Made by a program: the position numbers and the translations under genes
The notes under the pieces: generated by a model
Told to the model about the DNA's origin: nothing
Databases searched by the model: none
What the model saw: only the letters and a program-made list of their open reading frames with translations
Origin: Octopus sinensis
Taxonomy: Eukaryota
DNA: 64,000 bases
Assembly: GCF_006345805.1 (NCBI RefSeq)
Contig: NC_043013.1
Span: 49,476,001 to 49,540,000 of the forward strand
Reading direction: 5' to 3'
In this document: piece by piece, positions 10,158 to 62,745 of the stretch
Layout of the letters: each line of letters begins with the position of its first letter
How positions within the stretch are numbered: the first letter of the stretch is position 1

Positions 10158-10421
10158 TCATCATCATCATCATCATTCAGCGTCCGCTTTCCATGCTAGC
10201 ATGGGTTGGACGGTTCAACTGGGGTCTGGGAAGCCAGAAGGCTGCACCAGGCTCCAGTCTGATCTGGCAGTGTTTCTACGGCTGGATGCCCTTCCTAACG
10301 CCAACCACTCCATGAGTGTAGTGGGTGCTTTTTACGTGCCACCTGCACAGGTGCCAGACAAGGCTGGCAAATGGCCACGATCGGATGGTGCTTTTTACAT
10401 GCCACCAGCACAGGTGCCAGT

Positions 10422-22320: not shown

Positions 22321-23162
22321 ATATGAAATGAATGCTGATACTACTTCTCACATATGAGGAAAATGGTAAACGAAAGTTAAAGAACTATATTACTTGTAAT
22401 TTGCACATTATGATTATCTAAACTATCTACAATAAAAGTATTTACAGAATTATTAATTTTGCTATTTATATTCATATAACAAAATAATCATACTACACAT
22501 TAAGGAGCATATGAATTAATTAGTTCTTCATAAAAAAAAAACCGGTATTTCTAAACTTGTTCTAAAACAATTTTTACTTCCAAGAGAGAACATAAAATGC
22601 TAAAGAATTACAATTCCAATTTAGATGAATATCATTCAGCTTCAGAGCAGTCAGAACCATGCATGCTGTCTTAGTTACCTCAGTGAATATCTTGAACAAT
22701 TCAGCACTTGAAATACTATATTTAAATGGCAACATATCAAATCTATTTCACCATGAAGTCTTAAAATCTTATAATTAATTTCAGAATATAAGGTTTTCAA
22801 ATTCATTCAAGACCTTAGTTAAAACATTGGTAAAGGCTCTTTTATGCCACAGATATTAATGCTTGTATAATAAATTCTATGAGATATAGATATAGGAGGA
22901 ATATGAGTCAGTCACAAACCACTTAACGTGGAACATTAGCTTGTGTGAGCTAGCAAAGCAGCTATGCTTTAAAAACATCAACCAAACATGCAGAAAAGCA
23001 ACTATATGTAATACAGATATGTAATATTAGAAAGTTGGGAAAAAATTACTTAGCAAGAAAAGGAGACATCAGAACTTCAGATATGGGTATAACGGCAATT
23101 AAAATGACACATGGTCAAAAACTGTTGATAAATCAACTTAGACTTCAGATATGGGTATATAT

Positions 23163-23564
23163 TCTTTTACTCTTTTACTTGCTTCAGTCATTTGACTGCG
23201 GCCATGCTGGAGCACCGCCTTTAGTCGAGCAAATCGACCCCAGGACTTATTCTTTGTAAGCCCAGTATTTATTCTATCAGTTTCTTTTGCTGAACTGCTA
23301 AGTGACGGGGACGTAAACACACCAGCATCGGTTGTCAAGCAATGCTAGGGGGACAAACACAAACATACACGCACACACATATATATATATATACATATAT
23401 ACGACAGGCTTCTTTCAGTTTCCATCTACCAAATCCACTCACAAGGCATTGGTCGGCCCGGGGCTATAGCAGAAGACACTTGCCCAAGTTGCCACGCAGT
23501 GGGACTGAACCCGGAACCATGTGGTTGGTTAGCAAGCTACTTACCACACAGCCACTCCTGCGCC
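23163..23564 (-). mobile_element. SINE family A, full length
   Basis: Reverse-complement match ending CAGCCACTCCTGCGCC. Confidence 0.93.
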
Positions 23565-24115
23565 TATGGCAATTAAAATGACACATGATCAAAAACTGTT
23601 GATAAATCAACTTGCAGATTTCTCATTCAAACTCTACCAGCATTTAAAAATGGATATTAGAACACTGATAATGAAGAGGGGGATGGAAACATATGTTTTC
23701 TCTCTCTCTGTTGCTTTTCTTGTTAAACTTTTCCTAATCTATTCGTGGTAACATTAGTGTGGTGGTCGTTTTTGAAAATTATGAAGACTGGTTACCATGT
23801 CGTTTAAAATAATATAATGATTTTAAGGGGGATATGGCTGCTATTCCTGGTAAGTCAACTATACATAGCTGCTTGTTTTATAGTAGTATAAATTTTAACT
23901 TGTGGAGTACATGATAAGAGTGCATGCAAGCATACATGCATGCACACGCACACACACACAGACACACATGCACACACACACATGCACACGCACACACACA
24001 CAAACACATGCACACACACACGCACACACGCACACACACACATGCACATAGGCCCCTGTATTTTACCATCAATGCATACATACATAACATTTGCATGTTA
24101 TATAGGAGTTATATA

Positions 24116-24524: not shown

Positions 24525-24934
24525 ATATGATCACTCTGGATATGATCCTCCACAAATAACGATATATTCCTGTAATGCTTATTTCTTGTAATACAGTGTT
24601 TTCCTATTTCTCCCACATTTTTCATGAAGTCTGTTTGGGACCAGTGCAATACCATCCTCATATACGTTTACAGGCATTATTGTTTTGTAATAAATACATG
24701 ATTATTATTATTTAGGTAAGTAGTTGAAGAGCTACAAAACTTTTAAGATTTTAAATGAAATAATTAAGTTAATAGACATTTTCGTTATTGGTTTCAAATT
24801 TTAGCACAGGGCCAACAATTTTAGGGAAGAGGCTAAGTCGATTACACTGACCCCAGTGCTCAACTGCTTCTTATTTTATAGACCCTGAAAGGATGAAAAG
24901 CAAAGCTGACCACAACAGAATTTGAACTCAGAAC

Positions 24935-25303
24935 TCAAAATCAAAATCAAAATCGATCGACATCAATGGAAATTGTAGCTGTGATACCAGTGCCGGTGGC
25001 ACATAAGAGAACCATCTGAATGTGGCCGTTGCCAGCGCTGCCCCAACTGGCCTCCGTGCTGGTGGCACGTAAAAAGCACCAATCTGATCGTGGCCGTTGC
25101 CAGCCTTGCCTGGCACCTGTGCTGGTAGCACGTAAAAAGCACCCACTACACTCACGGAGTGGTTGGCGTTAGGAAGGGCATCAAGCTGTAGAAACACTGC
25201 CAAATCAGACTGGGCCTGGTGCAGCCTTCTGGCTTCCCAGACCCCAGTTAAACCGTCCAACCCATGCTAGCATGGAAAGCGGACGTTAAACAATGATGAG
25301 GAT
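24935..25303 (+). mobile_element. Family C retroelement, apparently full length, nested in an old family B SINE (about 24790-25377, minus strand)
   Basis: Starts with (TCAAAA)3, has three GTG(C)..G(T)GGCAC..AAAAAGCACC-type modules, ends ACGTTAAACAATGATGAGGAT; GAAC on both sides; family B sequence resumes afterwards. Confidence 0.82.
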
Positions 25304-32222: not shown

Positions 32223-32230
32223 ATGTGTGT

Positions 32231-32374
32231 GGAGGCGCAATGGCCCAGTGGTAAGGGCAGCGACTCGCGGTCGTAGGATTGCGGTTTCAATTCCCAGACC
32301 GGGTGTCGTGAGTGTATATTGAGCGAAAACACCAAAAAGCTCCACGAGGGTCCGGCAGGGGTGGTGGTGATCCC
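32231..32374 (+). mobile_element. SINE family D (tRNA-Arg-like head), 3'-truncated
   Basis: GGAGGCGCAATGGCCCAGTGGTAAGGGCAGCGACTCGCGG (TCG in the anticodon-loop position) and GGTTTCAATTCCC B box; homologous to the 48285 copy. Confidence 0.8.
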
Positions 32375-33060
32375 ATGTGTACATGTGGATGGCTGTGTGT
32401 GTGTGCATGTGTGTGTGTTTTGCTTGAGTATGTGTGTATATTCTCCGAAGCTGACACTGACGTAAAACATACACACCTGCAGCACAAGCTCATACACAGC
32501 ATACACTTGACTGAGTTACATTGTTTCACTTCTGCAGCCAACAGATACGTAAATACGGATACGCATACATTTGACATGTAAATAGCCTGTGATGTCAATC
32601 GCACACGTCTTTTCCCATATATAATACTAATGCACTCTCATCAGACACCCTCAGCCTAGAGGTTACCCTTTTTCAATTGTTTTTCATTTGCTTAATATTC
32701 TATAAGTTGATTTATATCTTAAACCAATAATTGATCAGCTATAAATACATTAAGCTATAAAATTTTTTATCCTGTCTATTGTAAATTAGTTATGTGAATA
32801 ACAGTAAACATGAAACGGTAGCCTCACTACTACAATAAAATTGTCTGTCTGTCTGTCTATTTTTCTATCTATCTATATATATATATATATATATATATCT
32901 AATATAGGATAGAATTTTTTTCGAAAAATTCTATCAATGGCCAGCATATTAAAAAAATACCTTTAATGGTTAAATTTATAAGCAATTTATAAGTAAGGGC
33001 AAAAGAAAAAAATTCTAATGCCAAAATATGCCGAAAAGAGACACTACGTCAATAATTATA

Positions 33061-35532: not shown

Positions 35533-35575
<43 letters not shown>

Positions 35576-35797
35576 TTGTGTGTGTGTGTGTCTGTGTTTG
35601 TCCCCCTAGCATTGCTTGACAACCGATGCTGGTGTGTTTACGTCCCTGTCACTTATCGGTTCGACAAAAGAGACCGATAGAATAAGTACTGGGCTTACAA
35701 AGAATAAGTCCCGGGGTTGATTTGCTCGACTAAAGGCGGTGCTCCAGCATGGCCGCAGTCAAATGACTGAAACAAGTAAAAGAGTAAAAGAGTAAAG
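35368..35797 (+). mobile_element. SINE family A; its 3' half is tandemly duplicated at 36036-36244
   Basis: Full head-to-tail match to family A. Confidence 0.92.
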
Positions 35798-36470
35798 AGT
35801 ATTAGAGAAAGAACCATTTTCTAACCAAGATCCAAAGCTCCTTCGTTGAAATTCAACAACATCAAGAGGGTATATTTTTGCATGTATGAGTGTATATGTG
35901 CAGTACTTGGAGTCAATGCATGTGCAGATTTGCATGTCTTGTTTTATAATGGGAATATTCTCATGTAAGTGATAAACTTCAGAAAAGTTTTGCAAAGATT
36001 TACAGTTCCTCTGTGTGTGTGTGTGTGTGTGTGTGTCTGTGTTTGTCCCCCTAGCATTGCTTGACAACCGATGCTGGTGTGTTTACGTCCCTGTCACTTA
36101 TCGGTTCGACAAAAGAGACCGATAGAATAAGTACTGGGCTTACAAAGAATAAGTCCCGGGGTTGATTTGCTCGACTAAAGGCGGTGCTCCAGCATGGCCG
36201 CAGTCAAATGACTGAAACAAGTAAAAGAGTAAAAGAGTAAAGAGTATTAGAGAAAGAACCATTTTCTAACCAAGATCCAAAGCTCCTTCGTTGAAATTTC
36301 AACAACATCAAGAGGGTATATTTTTGCATGTATGAGTGTATATGTGCAGTACTTGGAGTCAATGCATGTGCAGATTTGCATGTCTTGTTTTATAATGGGA
36401 ATATTCTCATGTAAGTGATAAACTTCAGAAAAGTTTTGCAAAGATTTACAGTTCCTCTGTGTGTGTGTGT
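35591..36470. repeat. 445 bp tandem duplication bounded by (GT)n tracts
   Basis: 35591-36035 is repeated at 36036 to about 36470, with one visible 1-bp indel. Confidence 0.92.
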
Positions 36471-37946
36471 GGTGTGTGTGTGTGTGCGCGCACATGCGCA
36501 TACATGCAATTGTATGTATGTCTTGAGTATGACTTCTAACTGCATCCAGTAGTTGGACCCTGATACAAGAGTTCCAGGGGTTTTGAGGAGTGTGGAACCG
36601 CCTCTTAGCCACCTTTGTTCCCAGGTTTACTCTGATCTGGAGTAGTAGCACCTGTTTGGGTCCCAACTATGGGTTAACTAGCACATGAACCACAGGGAGT
36701 GAAGGACCCCTAGTTCTCAATAGAACTTCCTTCGAGAAGATAAACATGTCTAAATGTGAAGTGCCCTCAATTTCTGGTCGTTTCAATCTCTGTTGAAAAG
36801 TGGGTTCAGTGCTGTGCAACACTTTATCCATTCATATCAAATTTATGCACAGAAACTTCTTGGACTCTCAGAACGTGTGCAGGAATTTACTGAGTTTAGA
36901 AAATGGTCTAACTTGGCCACAAGCTAACTTCCACTATATGTATATGTGTGTGTACACATGTATGTACATATATATAATAAACCTTTACATAAATAAATAA
37001 CGTGCAATATACGAAGGGACGAACATAAAAGACAAACGGGTCATTCAAAGCCTTCGTTCTTCAGTCAGAAACTGATTCCTCATCGCAGATTTCGGCTGTT
37101 TAATTCTGAGATCTGCTCTGAATCAGCCAGCCACAGAAGGAAAGAATGCAACGCAACAGAGACGAACATGAAACGAAAAAATCTTTTTTGAAGACAGTAA
37201 CGTACATATATATATACATATCAATAATAAAGTGATTGTTTCTTATCAGGAACAAACTGTTTAATAGGACTGCTATAGAAGTGCTCAATTGAATGAGACA
37301 AATATATTAAACCATGGTTGCAGAACAAACAAATATAAGGTCATCCACCTAACATTTCATATCTCGAACATTTAATCACATAATGCCTTTTCTTTCACAT
37401 AGAATATACATGCATAAAATCACCAGACATTTGTACATTTCTGCATATGCTTTATACGCACTTTTTGACAAGTTGTGGTGCACCTGAGCACTGTATACAA
37501 TAATTTCATTATTATTATATATATGTATGTACATATTTATGCACATATATGTATATACGTATGTATATATAAGTATGTACATACATATATATACATATGT
37601 ATTCATGCTTGCACACCTAAAAGAACTAAAATGTGGCTGTAACGAAAACTGTATTGAATAATGTGGTCCTAGATCAAACTACATTTCCTGAGTTGTTTCA
37701 AATTTTCAATTTGCATAAAATACTTAAACTTCTAACAAGCAATATCATGCAATATCATGTTCACTGTTCTTTATATCCATGACTCCATTACACACATGTC
37801 TGAAATTCATGTGCATTTCGTATTGTACAGTAAACACAGCAACTTTGTATGTTAACTTGCATCATAATTTGTTTCCTAACAAGTTATAGTGACAAAAATA
37901 ATGCAAATTTCCTTTTCAAAGAAATGCATATAGATATAAAATGGAA

Positions 37947-44089: not shown

Positions 44090-44360
44090 ATAAAGCATGG
44101 CTGTGTGCTTAAGAAGTTCACTTCAAACTACGTGGTTTCAGGTTCAGTCCTGCCGCATGGCACCATGGGTATATCTTCCACTGTGAGCATGGGCCAACCA
44201 AAGCCTTGTGGCAGACAAACTGAAAGTAGACTGCTGTATGTGTATGTATATGTGTATGTATGTGTGTGTGTGTGTGTGTGTGTATGTGTGTGTGTGTGTG
44301 TGTGTGTATGTGTGTGTGTATGTGAGTGTGTGTACGTGAGTCTTCTTGTCTTATGATGCT
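44090..44360 (+). mobile_element. Old, diverged SINE family A 5' half
   Basis: ATGGCTGTGTGCTTAAG..GGTTCAGTCC..GCATGGCACCATGGG..GGGCCAACCAAAGCCTTGTG followed by (TG)n. Confidence 0.65.
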
Positions 44361-44420
44361 GTGTGATAGCTGTTAGTACAAAATCTACTTCAACAAACAT
44401 CTGTACATACAATATATATA

Positions 44421-47400
44421 TGGCACCTTGGGCAAGTGTCTTCTACTAGAGCCTTGGGCCAACCAAAGCCTTGTGAGTAGATTTGGTAGACGGAAACTGA
44501 AAGAAACCCACCATAAATATATAAATAGGCATAGGAGTGGCTGCGTGGTAAGTAGCTTGCTTACCAACCACATGGTTCCGGGTTCAGTCCCACTGCATGG
44601 CACCTTCGGCAAGTGTCTTCTACTAGAGCCTTGGGCCAACCAAAGCCTTGTGAGTAGATTTGGTAGACGGAAACTGAAAGAAACCCACCATAAATATATA
44701 AATAGGCATAGGAGTGGCTGTGTGGTAAGTAGCTTGCTTACCAACCACATGGTTCCGGGTTCAGTCCCACTGCATGGCACCTTGGGCAAGTGTCTTCTAC
44801 TAGAGCCTTGGGCCAACCAAAGCCTTGTGAGTAGATTTGGTAGACGGAAACTGAAAGAAACCCACCATAAATATATAAATAGGCATAGGAGTGGCTGTGT
44901 GGTAAGTAGCTTGCTTACCAACCACATGGTTCCGGGTTCAGTCCCACTGCATGGCACCTTGGGCAAGTGTCTTCTACTAGAGCCTTGGGCCAACCAAAGC
45001 CTTGTGAGTAGATTTGGTAGACGGAAACTGAAAGAAACCCACCATAAATATATAAATAGGCATAGGAGTGGCTGTGTGGTAAGTAGCTTGCTTACCAACC
45101 ACATGGTTCCGGGTTCAGTCCCACTGCATGGCACCTTGGGCAAGTGTCTTCTACTAGAGCCTTGGGCCAACCAAAGCCTTGTGAGTAGATTTGGTAGACG
45201 GAAACTGAAAGAAAACCCATCATAAATATATAAATAGGCATAGGAGTGGCTGTGTGGTAAGTAGCTTGCTTACCAACCACATGGTTCCGGGTTCAGTCCC
45301 ACTGCATGGCACCTTGGGCAAGTGTCTTCTACTATAGCCTTGGGCCAACCAAAGCCTTGTGAGTGGATTTGGTAGACGGAAACTGAAAGAAAAACCCATC
45401 ATAAATATATAAATAGGCATAGGAGTGGCTGTGTGGTAAGTAGCTTGCTTACCAACCACATGGTTCCGGGTTCAGTCCCACTGCATGGCACCTTGGTCAA
45501 GTGTCTTCTACTATAGCCTTGGGCCAACCAAAGCCTTGTGAGTAGATTTGGTAGACGGAAACTGAAAGAAACCCACCATAAATATATAAATAGGCATAGG
45601 AGTGGCTGTGTGGTAAGTAGCTTGCTTACCAACCACATGGTTCCGGGTTCAGTCCCACTGCATGGCACCTTGGGCAAGTGTCTTCTACTAGAGCCTTGGG
45701 CCAACCAAGCCTTGTGAGTAGATTTGGTAGACGGAAACTGAAAGAAACCCATCATAAATATATAAATAGGCATAGGAGTGGCTGTGTGGTAAGTAGCTTG
45801 CTTACCAACCACATGGTTCCGGGTTCAGTCCCACTGCATGGCACCTTGGTCAAGTGTCTTCTACTATAGCCTTGGGCAACCAAAGCCTTGTGAGTAGATT
45901 TTGTAGACAGAAACTGAAAGAAACCATCATAAATATATAAATAGGCATAGGAGTGGCTGTGTGTGGTAAGTAGCTTGCTTACCAACCACATGGTTCCGGG
46001 TTCAGTCCCACTGCATGGCACCTTGGGCAAGTGTCTTCTACTAGAGCCTTGGGCCAACCAAAGCCTTGTGAGTAGATTTGGTAGACGGAAACTGAAAGAA
46101 ACCCACCATAAATATATAAATAGGCATAGGAGTGGCTGTGTGGTAAGTAGCTTGCTTACCAACCACATGGTTCCGGGTTCAGTCCCACTGCATGGCACCT
46201 TGGGCAAGTGTCTTCTACTATAGCCTTGGGCCAACCAAAGCCTTGTGAGTGGATTTGGTAGACGGAAACTGAAAGAAACCCATCATAATATATAAATAGG
46301 CATAGGAGTGGCTGTGTGGTAAGTAGCTTGCTTACCAACCACATGGTTCGGGTTCAGTCCCACTGCATGGCACCTTGGTCAAGTGTCTTCTACTATAGCC
46401 TTGGGCCAACCAAAGCCTTGTGAGTAGATTTGGTAGACGGAAACTGAAAGAAACCCACCATAAATATATAAATAGGCATAGGAGTGGCTGTGTGGTAAGT
46501 AGCTTGCTTACCAACCACATGGTTCCGGGTTCAGTCCCACTGCATGGCACCTTGGTCAAGTGTCTTCTACTAGAGCCTTGGGCCAACCAAAGCCTTGTGA
46601 GTAGATTTGGTAGACGGAAACTGAAAGAAACCCATCATAAATATATAAATAGGCATAGGAGTGGCTGTGTGGTAAGTAGCTTGCTTACCAACCACATGGT
46701 TCCGGGTTCAGTCCCACTGCATGGCACCTTGGTCAAGTGTCTTCTACTATAGCCTTGGGCCAACCAAAGCCTTGTGAGTAGATTTTGTAGACGGAAACTG
46801 AAAGAAACCCATCATAAATATATAAATAGGCATAGGAGTGGCTGTGTGGTAAGTAGCTTGCTTACCAACCACATGGTTCCGGGTTCAGTCCCACTGCATG
46901 GCACCTTGGGCAAGTGTCTTCTACTAGAGCCTTGGGCCAACCAAAGCCTTGTGAGTAGATTTGGTAGACGGAAACTGAAAGAAACCCACCATAAATATAT
47001 AAATAGGCATAGGAGTGGCTGTGTGGTAAGTAGCTTGCTTACCAACCACATGGTTCCGGGTTCAGTCCCACTGCATGGCACCTTCGGCAAGTGTCTTCTA
47101 CTAGAGCCTTGGCCAACCAAAGCCTTGTGAGTAGATTTGGTAGACGGAAACTGAAAGAAACCCACCATAAATATATAAATAGGCATAGGAGTGGCTGTGT
47201 GGTAAGTAGCTTGCTTACCAACCACATGGTTCCGGGTTCAGTCCCACTGCATGGCACCTTGGGCAAGTGTCTTCTACTAGAGCCTTGGCCAACCAAAGCC
47301 TTGTGAGTAGATTTGGTAGACGGAAACTGAAAGAAACCCACCATAAATATATAAATAGGCATAGGAGTGGCTGTGTGGTAAGTAGCTTGCTTACCAACCA

Positions 47401-48222
47401 CATGGTTCCGGGTTCAGTCCCACTGCATGGCACCTTGGGCAAGTGTCTTCTACTATAGCCTTGGGCCAACCAAAGCCTTGTGAGTAGATTTGGTAGATGG
47501 AAACTGAAAGAAACCCATCATAAATATATAAATAGGCATAGGAGTGGCTGTGTGGTAAGTAGCTTGCTTACCAACCACATGGTTCCGGGTTCAGTCCACT
47601 GCATGGCACCTTGGGCAAGTGTCTTCTACTATAGCCTTGGGCCAACCAAAGCCTTGTGAGTGGATTTGGTAGACGGAAACTGAAAGAAACCCATCATAAA
47701 TATATAAATAGGCATAGGAGTGGCTGTGTGGTAAGTAGCTTGCTTACCAACCACATGGTTCCGGGTTCAGTCCCACTGCATGGCACCTTGGGCAAGTGTC
47801 TTCTACTATAGCCTTGGGCCAACCAAAGCCTTGTGAGTAGATTTGGTAGACGGAAACTGAAAGAAACCCATCATAAATATATAAATAGGCATAGGAGTGG
47901 CTGTGTGGTAAGTAGCTTGCTTACCAACCACATGGTTCCGGGTTCAGTCCCACTGCATGGCACCTTGGGCAAGTGTCTTCTACTATAGCCTTGGGCCAAC
48001 CAAAGCCTTGTGAGTAGATTTGGTAGACGGAAACTGAAAGAACCCATCATAAATATATAAATAGGCATAGGAGTGGCTGTGTGGTAAGTAGCTTGCTTAC
48101 CAACCACATGGTTCCGGGTTCAGTCCCACTGCATGGCACCTTGGGCAAGTGTCTTCTACTATAGCCTTGGGCCAACCAAAGCCTTGTGAGTAGATTTGGT
48201 AGACAGAAACTGAAAGAAGCCC
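44421..48222 (+). repeat. SINE-derived tandem satellite: 21 complete ~177 bp units plus a partial first unit, each the tRNA-like head and CORE-like segment of SINE A
   Basis: Unit starts (GGCATAGGAG) at 44528, 44705, 44882, 45059, 45237, 45416, 45593, 45769, 45944, 46123, 46299, 46475, 46652, 46829, 47006, 47182, 47358, 47535, 47711, 47888 and 48064; period 175-179 bp. Confidence 0.97.
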
Positions 48223-48223
48223 G

Positions 48224-48279
<56 letters not shown>

Positions 48280-48284
48280 TACGT

Positions 48285-48580
48285 GGAGGCGCAATGGCGC
48301 AGTAGTTAGGGCAGCGGACTCGCGGTTGTAGGATCGCGGTTTCGATTGTGAGTGTTTATTGAGCGAAAACACCTAAAGCTCCACGAAGCTCCAGCAGGGG
48401 GTGGTGGCGATCCCTGCTGTACTCTTTCACCACAACTTTCTCTCACTCTTTCTTCTGTTGGCCTGCTCACTTAGCCACGGGGTGGCGTCATTTGGAGGCT
48501 AAAGCAATGCGAATCGCATTGTGACCAGCGATGTCTTGTAACATCTGATAGCTTGGTCAGTCACGGTTATCACGGTGATA
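48285..48580 (+). mobile_element. SINE family D (tRNA-Arg-like) inserted in the (TA)n of the terminal SINE A
   Basis: GGAGGCGCAATGGCGCAGTAGTTAGGGCAGCGGACTCGCGG head; tail GTCACGGTTATCACGGTGATA. Confidence 0.85.
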
Positions 48581-48803
48581 TATATATACACATATGTGTA
48601 TGTGTGTGTTTGTGTATTTGTGTTTGTCCCCCCCAGCATCACTTGACAACCGATGCTGGTGTGTTTACGCACCCATAACTTAGCAGTTCAGCAAAAAGAG
48701 ACCAATTGAATTAGTACTAGGCTGACAAAGAATAAGTCCTGGGGTTTATTTGCTCAACTAAAGGTGGTACTCCAGCATGGCCGCAGTCAAATGACTGAAA
48801 CAA
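48581..48803 (+). mobile_element. 3' half of the SINE A copy that ends the array
   Basis: TGTTTGTCCCCCCCAGCATCACTTGACAACCGATG...GCAGTCAAATGACTGAAACAA. Confidence 0.9.
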
Positions 48804-48967
48804 ATATATATATATATATATGAATATTAAGCAGAAACAACAGAGTGACTCAGGGGCAGAGAATTTCCTGCATTGGCACTTATCAAACACACAAAACCCT
48901 TGGCCATTGAGTCAGTCTGTTGCTTCTAAATATTAATAAATAATAAATAAACCTGGTAGCTTTCATT

Positions 48968-49862: not shown

Positions 49863-50356
49863 ATCATCATCATCATCATCATCGTTTAACGTCTGCTTTC
49901 CATGCTAGCATGGGTTGGATGGTTTTGACTGAGGGCTGGCCAGCCAGATGGCTGCACCAGGCTCCAGTCTTAATCTGGCAGAGTTTCTACAGCTGGATGC
50001 CCTTCCTAACGCCAACCACTCCGAGAGTGTAGTGGGTGCTTTTTACGTGCCACTGGCACGGGGGGGGCCAGTCAGGCGATACTGGCAATGACCTCGCTCG
50101 AATCTTTTCACACGTGCCACCAGCACAGGTGCCAGTGAAGCAACGATCACGCTTGAATGGTGCTCTTTTACATGCCATGGGTACGGAAACCATTTGGCTG
50201 CTCTGGCAACGATCATGCTCGGATGGTGCTCTTGGCACCCTACTAGCACAGGCATAAGTGCCAGTAAGGCAATGCTGGTAACAATCACACTCATATGGTG
50301 CTCTCTGCACCCAACTAGCACAGATGCCAGTCATCGAAATGATTTTGATTTTGATT
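49863..50356 (-). mobile_element. Family C retroelement, full length with extra internal modules
   Basis: (CAT)n tail at the left, GATTTTGATTTTGATT (reverse complement of the AATCAA repeat head) at the right, about five AGCACC-type modules. Confidence 0.85.
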
Positions 50357-62539: not shown

Positions 62540-62745
62540 GTTAACATCATCATCATCATCGTTTAACATCCACTCTCCATCCTGGCATGGGTTGGATGGT
62601 TTGACATGGAGTTGACCAGCCAGGAGCTGTTCAGACTCCAACTGTCCAATGGGGCATGGTTTCTATGGCTGGATGCCCCTCCTAATGCCAATCACTTAGC
62701 AGAGTGTGCTGAGTGCTTTTTAAGGGGCAATTGGCACCTGGAAGG
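62540..62745 (-). mobile_element. Older family C/RTE-tail element
   Basis: (CAT)nCGTTTAACATCC...GCATGGGTTGGATGGTTTGAC...GGATGCCCCTCCTAATGCCAA. Confidence 0.7.

What the first reader, a model, noticed from the sequence alone, without database searches (positions are those of the whole stretch)
44421..48222. 3.8 kb satellite built from the Pol III head of a SINE (about 21.6 x 177 bp)
Seen: each unit is the 5' ~150 bp of SINE A (A-box-like TGGCTGTGTGG, B-box-like GGTTCAGTCCC, CORE-like ACCTTGGGCAAGTG) plus an AT-rich linker (CATAAATATATAAATA). Units are almost identical, whereas dispersed copies are more diverged from each other. Diagnostic bases (GGCATAGG, GCATGG, AGCCTTGGG) match the copy at 903, i.e. 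one subfamily. Established: SINE-derived satellites are known in some vertebrates, and clustered B boxes bind TFIIIC and can act as chromatin boundaries. Inference: a recently amplified cephalopod SINE-satellite packing 21 Pol III promoters in a near nucleosome-length period; it could be an insulator, a Pol III RNA source or a nascent satellite family.
Basis: partly seen in the sequence, partly recalled or inferred. Interest (0 to 1): 0.8.

Follow-up and report, generated by a model that had tools for sequence, protein, structure and literature searches.

The report
Tandem array of an octopus SINE head
One old copy of a common octopus retroposon (a SINE) has had its first 165 bases copied head-to-tail about 21 times into a 3.8 kb array; this kind of repeat is already known from reptiles and a limpet, and nothing here shows that it has a function.

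Summary
Window 44420-48240 is a head-to-tail array of 21.6 units of about 177 bp. Units are 98.6% alike by substitutions, against 86.7% among dispersed copies.

Each unit is the whole 5' module of a composite SINE (about 162 bp, with box A-like, box B-like and CORE-like motifs) plus about 15 bp of that SINE's own internal (TA)n tract. The last unit runs on into the rest of the same SINE: (AT)n, a later SINE B insertion, (TG)n, then the 3' module at 48619-48806. So this is an internal amplification within one insertion.

The founder was old. Unit variants form two haplotypes, recombinants and a 5-unit block duplication, which fits unequal exchange.

The best reading is a neutral, locus-specific SINE-derived tandem repeat, seeded by misalignment of TA-rich tracts. 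The same anatomy is described for squamate SINE-derived satellites.

The Pol III, TFIIIC and insulator ideas remain untested. No box is canonical, and neither ARAGORN nor Rfam finds a tRNA-like match. I could not test whether other loci carry the array. This is a new member of a known kind, of modest interest.

The parts
44411..44419 (.). Short (AT)n tract in the unique left flank, directly abutting the array. It is the likely site of the microhomology at the left breakpoint.
   Evidence: Read directly from the sequence...ACAATATATAT|ATGGCACC. The left flank 44320-44425 has no significant similarity to the SINE 3' module (score 23 against a shuffle mean of 20).
44420..44527 (+). Leading partial unit (u00), covering unit positions about 70-177. 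It starts mid-head, after the box B-like motif, and carries the derived haplotype A (TAGAG + CACC).
44528..48063 (+). Twenty full units (u01-u20) of 175-179 bp. Each holds the SINE A head from its 5' end (GGCATAGG...), a box A-like motif at unit position 11, a box B-like motif at position 54, the CORE-like ACCTTGGGCAAGT, ...GAAACTGAAAGAAACCCA(C/T)C, and the 15-bp linker ATAAATATATAAATA.
   Evidence: Variants form two haplotypes plus recombinants. Block u05-u09 matches u10-u14 with 2 substitution differences (permutation fraction 0.006).
48064..48225 (+). Terminal head (u21). Its 3' end keeps the ancestral GAAGCCCGTC and runs into the SINE's original internal microsatellite instead of a linker.
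   Evidence: four private states at the 3' edge, equal to the consensus of dispersed copies.
48226..48282 (+). (AT)n part of the internal microsatellite of the parent SINE A.
   Evidence: Dispersed copies have (TA)n at the same position.
48283..48579 (+). Later insertion of an unrelated SINE (SINE B) into that microsatellite. It has many intact CpGs and is flanked by a 10-bp target-site duplication ATATATATAC (48273-48282 and 48580-48589).
   Evidence: Read. Only one other, diverged copy is in the window.
48590..48618 (+). (TG)n-like remainder of the parent SINE's internal microsatellite.
   Evidence: same order (TA)n then (TG)n as in dispersed copies.
48619..48806 (+). 3' module ('module 2') of the parent SINE A, 87% identical to a younger copy and also CpG-decayed. 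Its usual (TAAAAGAG)n tail is replaced by (AT)n at 48804-48821.

Best explanation
**What it is.** A locus-specific, SINE-derived tandem repeat. One old insertion of a composite CORE-type SINE had its 5' module amplified in place to about 21 copies. The SINE's structure is: head of about 165 bp, internal (TA)n(TG)n microsatellite, 3' module of about 205 bp, short-repeat tail.

**What the sequence shows directly.**
- The unit is the head from its very 5' end plus about 15 bp of the SINE's own (TA)n tract.
- The last unit is continuous with the rest of that SINE.
- The founder had already lost 6 of 8 CpGs.
- After the first duplication, the inner copy acquired a few private changes that were then spread through the array.
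- The units form two haplotypes, recombinants and a multi-unit block duplication.

**How it most likely arose (inferred).**
- The first duplication came from misalignment between the TA-rich 5' end or target of the SINE (ATA...) and its internal (TA)n tract. This could be replication slippage or unequal sister-chromatid exchange.
- Growth and partial homogenisation followed by unequal exchange in registers of one to several units.
- The left edge was later cut mid-unit by a small deletion at AT microhomology.

**Function.** The array is most likely selectively neutral. It holds about 18-21 box A/B-like promoter copies, but there is no evidence that they are used.
For: - Array anatomy.
- Composite SINE: in about 16 of 19 dispersed copies the head is followed by the 3' module in the same orientation across a microsatellite. 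The same 400-bp composite occurs in O. bimaculoides at L001:20068-20470.
- Continuity of the last unit with (AT)n, (TG)n and the 3' module at 48619-48806.
- Origin of the linker: it differs from the terminal unit's (AT)n by two T>A changes and aligns with the tail start of dispersed copies.
- Old founder: CpG transitions at 5 of the 10 head sites that differ from the consensus, plus further decayed CpGs in the tail start and the 3' module.
- Units are 98.6% identical, against 86.7% among dispersed heads.
- Ordered variants and a 5-unit block duplication: permutation fraction 0.006.
- A two-copy analogue lies in the same window. 35569-36486 is a 445-bp x2.06 duplication of another SINE A's 3' module plus flank, bounded on both sides by (TG)n.
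- The published pattern for SINE-derived satellites is a terminal unit extended to the SINE terminus, with origin by unequal recombination (PMC10702118). The flanking-short-repeat model for first duplications is in PMC6947457.
- No sign of coding or structured RNA: Pfam hits are all below the curated cut-offs, there are no Rfam hits, and the RNA fold z-score is +0.39.
Against: - The left end of the array is a derived-haplotype unit cut mid-head. A purely in-situ history predicts an ancestral full first unit next to the original 5' flank, so an extra event (a deletion) has to be assumed.
- The junction lies in low-complexity AT sequence, so the exact breakpoint and the microhomology cannot be proven.
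- Only one assembly and one locus were visible. I could not show that the array is unique in the genome, or that the copy number is right.
- Neutrality is a default assumption, not a result.
Confidence: 0.72

Rival explanations
1. The array is a functional Pol III/TFIIIC element. Clustered B boxes recruit TFIIIC and act as a chromatin boundary, or the heads are transcribed as a Pol III RNA source.
For: - Of the 21 heads, 18 keep both box-like motifs with a constant 32-bp spacing.
- Two of the eight consensus CpGs survive.
- TFIIIC binding to SINEs has been reported in mammals (PMC3744447, listed; not read in full).
Against: - No unit has a canonical A box (TRGCNNAGTGG) or B box (GGTTCRANNCC). 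Each box is one mismatch off, and the B box differs at the position equivalent to tRNA A58.
- No tRNA-like signal from ARAGORN or Rfam, even at E<=5 for younger heads.
- The box motifs are simply those of every dispersed copy, so their presence needs no selection.
- TTTT terminators occur in only 2 units, and after the last head not until 49081, so transcripts would run through many units.
- The founder was a decayed copy.
- The unit RNA has no unusual fold.
Confidence: 0.07
2. The array was not formed here. It is one copy of a pre-existing multi-unit element or satellite family that arrived at this site. One route is retrotransposition of a read-through multi-unit transcript, 5'-truncated as LINE-mediated copies often are. 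Another is re-integration of rolling-circle-amplified circular DNA.
For: - The whole structure is 5'-truncated at an arbitrary phase and 3'-complete. It has a partial unit at 44420 and the 3' module at 48619-48806, which is the shape of a truncated retrocopy.
- (AT)n lies at both outer ends, at 44411-44419 and 48804-48821, and could be a low-complexity target duplication.
- Very few TTTT runs lie inside.
Against: - A Pol III transcript of more than 4 kb would be unusual.
- Two units do contain TTTT.
- The terminal unit keeps ancestral edge states while inner units are homogenised. That is the signature of in-situ array dynamics, although it could have been inherited from a master locus.
- The rolling-circle route predicts arbitrary phase at both ends, but the 3' end is in register with the parent SINE.
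- Other SINE A copies show no clear target duplications to compare with.
- No second locus was found. The searches that could be run had little power.
Confidence: 0.1
3. The array is largely an assembly artefact. The real locus has one to a few heads, and the assembler inflated the copy number.
For: - Eleven of the 25 variable columns among units are 1-2-bp homopolymer length changes, typical of unpolished long-read consensus.
- Copy number in tandem arrays is error-prone in assemblies.
Against: - The substitution variants are shared between units in an ordered way: two haplotypes, recombinants, and a 5-unit block with its own private differences. Random errors or simple over-expansion would not produce this.
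- 3.8 kb is well within the length of a single long read.
- The terminal unit has distinct ancestral states.
Confidence: 0.05

Closest known systems
SINE-derived satellites (sSats) of squamate reptiles (Vassetzky, Kosushkin & Ryskov 2023, PMC10702118)
   Same: - Head-to-tail repeats of a portion of a tRNA-related SINE.
- A longer terminal unit that continues to the SINE terminus.
- Unit length in the 150-180 bp class.
- Higher homogeneity within the array than among dispersed SINEs.
- Alternating or multi-unit patterns.
- Proposed origin by unequal recombination.
   Different: - A different phylum and an unrelated SINE family.
- Only one locus was seen here, whereas abundant sSats occupy many, often subtelomeric, loci of up to 1000 units.
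- Here the unit is the complete 5' module, bounded by the SINE's own internal microsatellite.
PcH-sat of the limpet Patella caerulea (179-bp satellite with a 118-bp Nin-SINE-like segment; PMC11121367)
   Same: - A mollusc.
- A monomer of about 179 bp partly derived from a SINE.
- Monomers 91.6-99.8% alike.
   Different: - PcH-sat is a true high-copy pericentromeric satellite, about 10% of the genome.
- Its parent SINE is inferred from another species.
- The octopus array is 3.8 kb and still embedded in its parent SINE.
Amphibian Pol III/tRNA-like tandem families (newt PolIII/TAN, Xenopus satellite I/OAX, Rana/polIII, Hydromantes Hy/polIII), as summarised in PMC10702118
   Same: Tandem repeats whose units carry tRNA-like Pol III promoter boxes. 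At least the newt family can be transcribed in vitro.
   Different: - Those are abundant genome-wide families whose derivation from a SINE is considered unproven.
- Here the SINE parent is unambiguous, but abundance and transcription are unknown.
Minisatellites and tandem duplications born inside SINEs through flanking short repeats (Alu- and B1-derived minisatellites; Haber & Louis model, reviewed in PMC6947457)
   Same: The first duplication arises by slippage or unequal exchange between short repeats that flank the future unit. Expansion by unequal crossing-over follows.
   Different: - The unit here is much longer (177 bp against tens of bp).
- The flanking repeats here are the SINE's own (TA)n tract and its TA-rich 5' end.
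CORE-SINEs (MIR/Ther-1, octopus OR1)
   Same: - The head carries box A/B-like motifs.
- It is followed by ACCTTGGGCAAGT, identical to the MIR core stretch printed in PMC6344866.
- OR1 of octopus is listed as a CORE-SINE in PMC4824008.
   Different: - I could not compare with the OR1 sequence itself.
- The element here has an internal microsatellite and a 205-bp 3' module.

Membership tests
SINE-derived satellite (sSat, sensu PMC10702118) | Head-to-tail tandem repeats | tested here: met
   TRF: period 177, 21.6 copies, 98% matches. All units are on the + strand.
SINE-derived satellite (sSat, sensu PMC10702118) | Unit derived from a portion of a dispersed SINE of the same genome | tested here: met
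   The unit aligns over its full length to about 19 dispersed SINE A heads at 78-94% identity. The full SINE is longer: head + microsatellite + 3' module.
SINE-derived satellite (sSat, sensu PMC10702118) | Terminal unit extended to a SINE terminus | tested here: met
   The last head (48064-48225) continues into (AT)n/(TG)n and the 3' module at 48619-48806.
SINE-derived satellite (sSat, sensu PMC10702118) | Several loci with homogeneous units between loci; preference for subtelomeric regions | not testable with these tools
   - No octopus genome could be searched.
- The junction pattern is absent from metagenome contigs.
- Protein-space searches with array ORFs found only single-unit SINE matches. 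These searches have little power.
Classical satellite DNA | Long arrays (hundreds to thousands of units) at several heterochromatic loci | tested here: not met
   The locus seen is 3.8 kb with 21.6 units, flanked by ordinary SINE- and microsatellite-rich sequence. Other loci could not be examined.
tRNA-derived SINE head (type 2 Pol III promoter) | A box TRGCNNAGTGG and B box GGTTCRANNCC at tRNA-like spacing | tested here: inconclusive
   TGGCTGTGTGG sits at unit position 11 and GGTTCAGTCCC at position 54, with a 32-bp spacer. Each is one mismatch from the consensus, and no unit is canonical. The consensus strings come from my own knowledge.
tRNA-derived SINE head (type 2 Pol III promoter) | Recognisable tRNA-like sequence and structure | tested here: not met
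   - ARAGORN finds 0 genes in the window.
- Rfam gives no tRNA match in the array at E<=1, in younger heads at E<=5, or anywhere at gathering score.
CORE-SINE superfamily | Conserved CORE domain after the head | tested here: inconclusive
   There is a 13-base identity (ACCTTGGGCAAGT), with similar flanks, to the MIR core oligo in PMC6344866. No full CORE consensus or OR1 sequence was available to align.
TFIIIC-bound boundary element (ETC-like / B-box cluster) | TFIIIC occupancy and boundary activity | not testable with these tools
   This needs ChIP, CUT&Tag or reporter assays. Sequence shows only B box-like motifs, one mismatch off consensus.
Multimeric SINEs formed by repeated insertion of full elements (e.g. 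Dip/B1 multimers cited in PMC10702118) | Each unit is a complete SINE with its own 3' region and tail | tested here: not met
   Inner units lack the (TG)n tract, the 3' module and the tail. Only the last unit is followed by them.

The most novel reading that the evidence does not exclude
The array is one locus of an octopus-wide family of SINE-head satellites. Its roughly 20 phased box A/B promoters are occupied by TFIIIC or Pol III, making it a chromatin boundary or a source of multi-unit Pol III transcripts in a SINE-rich cephalopod genome.
Probability: 0.06. Interest if true: 0.6.

Novelty: new member of a known kind. Interest (0 to 1): 0.3.

Why it matters
SINE-derived tandem arrays were systematically described only in 2023, in squamates. 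The authors of that study left open whether they exist elsewhere (PMC10702118). In molluscs, one limpet satellite has been linked to a SINE (PMC11121367).

This octopus locus is a clean, early-stage example in which the parent SINE is still attached. That makes the birth of such an array readable: the unit boundaries lie at the SINE's own (TA)n tract, the founder was old, and growth went by multi-unit exchange. A two-copy analogue lies 9 kb away.

It suggests that SINEs carrying internal microsatellites, which are very dense in octopus genomes, are natural seeds for tandem repeats. Beyond that, it is an ordinary by-product of repeat dynamics unless Pol III or TFIIIC occupancy is shown.

Tried and rejected
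1. **tRNA origin of the head.** ARAGORN and Rfam gave no tRNA match, at gathering score and at E<=1 or E<=5. The only hits were spurious miRNA-family matches to the microsatellites.
2. **Coding potential.** 177 = 3 x 59, so ORFs of 261-265 aa run through the first units on both strands. Pfam hits are all below the curated cut-offs. The + frame is open only because of the derived TAGAG variant; TATAG gives a stop.
3. **Finding other arrays through protein space.**
   - The search for homologous proteins with the + ORF gave one O. bimaculoides protein covering one unit.
   - The HMMER scan of 1.84 billion representatives with the - ORF gave 28 weak hits, and all the SINE-derived ones match a single unit.
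   - The only two-stretch hit, P0002, is an unrelated repeat protein.
   - These searches say nothing firm about uniqueness.
4. **Exact junction search in metagenome contigs.** No match. This was expected, because the collection is not an octopus genome.
5. **Array-wide higher-order repeat.** The TRF 353-bp row scores no better than the 177-bp row. The shift-5 similarity is local rather than array-wide (permutation p=0.09 array-wide, 0.006 for the best 5-unit block).
6. **Left flank as a remnant of the 3' module of the older upstream SINE (44098-44333).** The alignment is no better than shuffles.
7. **Structured RNA.** The fold z-score is +0.39.
8. **Literature on cephalopod satellites.** Nothing relevant turned up in the searchable library.
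Full report
**1. The observation**

Tandem Repeats Finder reports a single strong array at window 44420-48240: period 177, 21.6 copies, 98% matches, score 7247. Splitting on the motif GGCATAGG gives 21 full heads, from 44528 to 48064, spaced 175-179 bp apart. A leading partial unit begins at ATGGCACC, position 44420.

- TGGCTGTGTGG in 19 units.
- GGTTCAGTCCC in 20 units.
- Both with a constant 32-bp spacer in 18 units.
- CCTTGGGCAAGT in 15 units.

The array has 46.5% G+C, against 36.5% for the window, and about 2 CpG per unit.

**2. What the unit is**

BLAST of one unit against the window finds about 19 dispersed copies on both strands, at 78-94% identity. In a flank-extended alignment, homology starts at (ATA)GGCGCAGG and runs to GAAAGAAGCCCGTCGTATATAT. 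After that every copy continues into a (TA)n(TG)n microsatellite.

A second conserved block of about 205 bp (GTCTGTGTTTGTCCCCC...GTCAAATGACTGAAACAAGTAAAAGAGTAAAAGA) follows that microsatellite, in the same orientation, in about 16 of the 19 copies. It ends in a short (TAAAAGAG)n-type tail.

The same 400-bp composite is present at L001:20068-20470 on Octopus bimaculoides chromosome CM046623.1. I reached that locus through the only protein-database hit of an array ORF. So SINE A is a composite element of head, internal microsatellite, 3' module and tail. The window comes from O. bimaculoides or a close relative.

The AT-rich linker ATAAATATATAAATA is the first 15 bp or so of the SINE's own (TA)n tract. 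It differs by two T>A changes from the (AT)n that follows the terminal unit.

**3. The array is still attached to its parent SINE**

The last head (48064-48225) ends in the ancestral GAAGCCCGTC. It is followed by these features, in order:
- (AT)n at 48226-48282.
- An unrelated SINE B at 48283-48579, flanked by a 10-bp target duplication ATATATATAC.
- A (TG)n-like stretch at 48590-48618.
- A well-preserved 3' module at 48619-48806.

Apart from the SINE B insertion, this is the normal SINE A layout. The array is thus an internal amplification of the head of one insertion. It is neither a cluster of separate insertions nor a free-standing satellite block. Inner units lack the (TG)n tract, the 3' module and the tail, which excludes a multimer built by repeated full-length insertions.

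**4. Age and history**

Compared with the consensus of dispersed heads, the unit differs at ten head sites. Five of these are CpG transitions:
- GGCG>GGCA
- GCGTGG>GCATGG
- CTCGGG>CTTGGG
- GCCGACC>GCCAACC
- CCCGTC>CCCATC

A sixth CpG is lost at the start of the tail. In all, six of eight consensus CpGs are gone. The 3' module of the same element shows the same kind of decay. The founder was therefore an old copy when amplification began.

Each CpG change is shared with 2-6 other dispersed copies in varying combinations. Copy c903 shares 5 of the 10 states, c44098 and c53721 share 4, and c3582, c14155 and c20662 share 3. Three non-CpG changes are private to the array.

Units are 98.6% identical by substitutions, against 86.7% among dispersed heads. 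So the expansion, or the last homogenisation, is recent relative to the insertion.

The terminal unit keeps ancestral states (GAAG, CCCGTC) that all inner units have lost. This is the usual edge effect in arrays that evolve by unequal exchange. It also implies that some time passed between the first duplication and the main expansion.

**5. Internal order**

Of the 25 variable alignment columns, 11 are 1-2-bp homopolymer length changes. These look like long-read consensus errors. The substitutions are ordered:
- Haplotype A (TAGAG + CACC, both derived) occupies u00-u03, u09 and u14-u16.
- Haplotype B (TATAG + CATC) occupies u05, u10, u13 and u17-u20.
- Both recombinant classes exist.
- Rarer variants recur at fixed offsets.

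Block u05-u09 matches u10-u14 with only two substitution differences over 885 bp. Only 0.6% of random unit orders contain a 5-unit block pair that similar. There is no array-wide higher-order repeat. This pattern fits unequal exchange in multi-unit register. It argues against a gross assembly artefact, though the exact copy number remains unverified.

**6. Mechanism**

Shown directly: the unit boundaries coincide with the SINE's 5' end, which begins ATAGG and usually sits in a TA-rich target, and with its internal (TA)n tract.

Inferred: the first duplication arose by misalignment of these two TA-rich tracts, through slippage or unequal sister-chromatid exchange. Further unequal exchange expanded and homogenised the array. 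This is the flanking-short-repeat model reviewed in PMC6947457, and the unequal-recombination origin proposed for squamate sSats.

A two-copy analogue lies in the same window. Region 35569-36486 is a 445-bp x2.06 duplication at 98-99% identity. It consists of another SINE A's (TG)n tract, 3' module and 240 bp of flank, bounded on both sides by (TG)n.

The awkward point is the left edge. The array begins mid-head with a derived-haplotype unit, directly after a short (AT)n tract in unique flank. I explain this by a later small deletion at AT microhomology. The alternative is that the whole structure is a 5'-truncated retrocopy of a master array, or a re-integrated rolling-circle product. I keep that as a rival at about 10%.

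**7. Function**

Nothing here supports a function.
- The box A-like and box B-like motifs are those of every dispersed copy. Each is one mismatch from the canonical consensus, and no unit is canonical (the consensus strings are from my own knowledge).
- ARAGORN and Rfam see no tRNA-like element in the array or in younger heads.
- TTTT occurs in only two units, and after the last head not until 49081. Any Pol III transcript would therefore run through several units.
- The unit RNA has no unusual stability (z = +0.39).
- The ORFs opened by the 3 x 59 period have no credible Pfam match.
- The 177-bp period is simply head plus linker. It falls in the common 150-180 bp satellite class, as does the 179-bp limpet PcH-sat.

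TFIIIC binding, insulation and Pol III transcription remain possible, but they cannot be tested here.

**8. Comparison with what is known**

The closest described kind is the SINE-derived satellite of squamates (PMC10702118). These are tandem repeats of part of a SINE, with a terminal unit extended to the SINE terminus, and with greater homogeneity in arrays than among dispersed copies. Three of the defining features are met here. The multi-locus and chromosomal features could not be tested.

In molluscs, PcH-sat of Patella links a true satellite to a Nin-SINE. My searches found no cephalopod report.

The SINE itself looks like a CORE-SINE. It shares ACCTTGGGCAAGT with the MIR core oligo in PMC6344866, and octopus OR1 is listed as a CORE-SINE in PMC4824008. 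I could not align it to OR1.

**9. Verdict**

The subfamily and functional readings are weak or untested. This is a new member of a known kind: a young, single-locus, SINE-derived tandem array in an octopus, still embedded in its parent element. Interest is modest (0.3). It is a clear illustration of how SINEs with internal microsatellites seed tandem repeats. Whether it is a satellite family, and whether its promoters are used, needs a whole-genome search, spanning reads and occupancy data.

Noticed in passing
window 35569-36486: A 445-bp x2.06 tandem duplication (98-99% identity). It consists of the (TG)n tract and 3' module of another SINE A copy plus 240 bp of unique flank, bounded on both sides by (TG)n. 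It looks like a two-copy 'seed' of the same microsatellite-bounded duplication process.
   Followed up: partly
window 23079-23615: A SINE A on the - strand (23160-23567) lies between two copies of a ~46-bp direct repeat, GGCAATTAAAATGACACATG(G/A)TCAAAAACTGTTGATAAATCAACTT (23095-23140 and 23569-23615). ACTTCAGATATGGGTATA is also repeated. The layout resembles a filled site and an empty site side by side, or an unusually long target duplication.
   Followed up: no
window 24900-25300 (also 2654-2907, 10167-10421, 49876-50136, 62553-62722): A third repeat family (…GTGCYGGTGGCACGTAAAAAGCACC…), with five copies. The copy at 24986-25143 carries an extra internal 63-bp tandem repeat (x2.5). This is another small internal duplication in the 5' part of a SINE-like element.
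   Followed up: partly
window 48283-48579: SINE B has many intact CpGs and a 10-bp target duplication ATATATATAC (48273-48282 and 48580-48589). It inserted into the internal microsatellite of the parent SINE A. Only one other, diverged copy is in the window (32229-32382, 79%).
   Followed up: partly
window 44528-48063: Eleven of the 25 variable columns among array units are 1-2-bp homopolymer length changes (AAA/AAAA, CC/C, GGG/GG). This suggests residual long-read consensus errors, so exact unit lengths should not be trusted.
   Followed up: partly
whole window: SINE A is very dense, at about 20 copies in 64 kb. Its internal (TA)n(TG)n tract accounts for many of the window's microsatellites. 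No protein-coding ORF with a Pfam match was found among the long ORFs tested, and no Rfam family reaches its gathering score.
   Followed up: partly
L001:10001-14721 (O. bimaculoides CM046623.1): The annotated protein LOC106871914 (P0001, 273 aa) contains a stretch 81% identical to the array's + strand ORF. It is therefore SINE-A-head-derived, and reflects either exonisation or an annotation artefact.
   Followed up: no
window 44098-44333: An older, 79%-identical SINE A head with a long (TG)n tract lies about 90 bp upstream of the array. It has no recognisable 3' module. It is not part of the array.
   Followed up: partly
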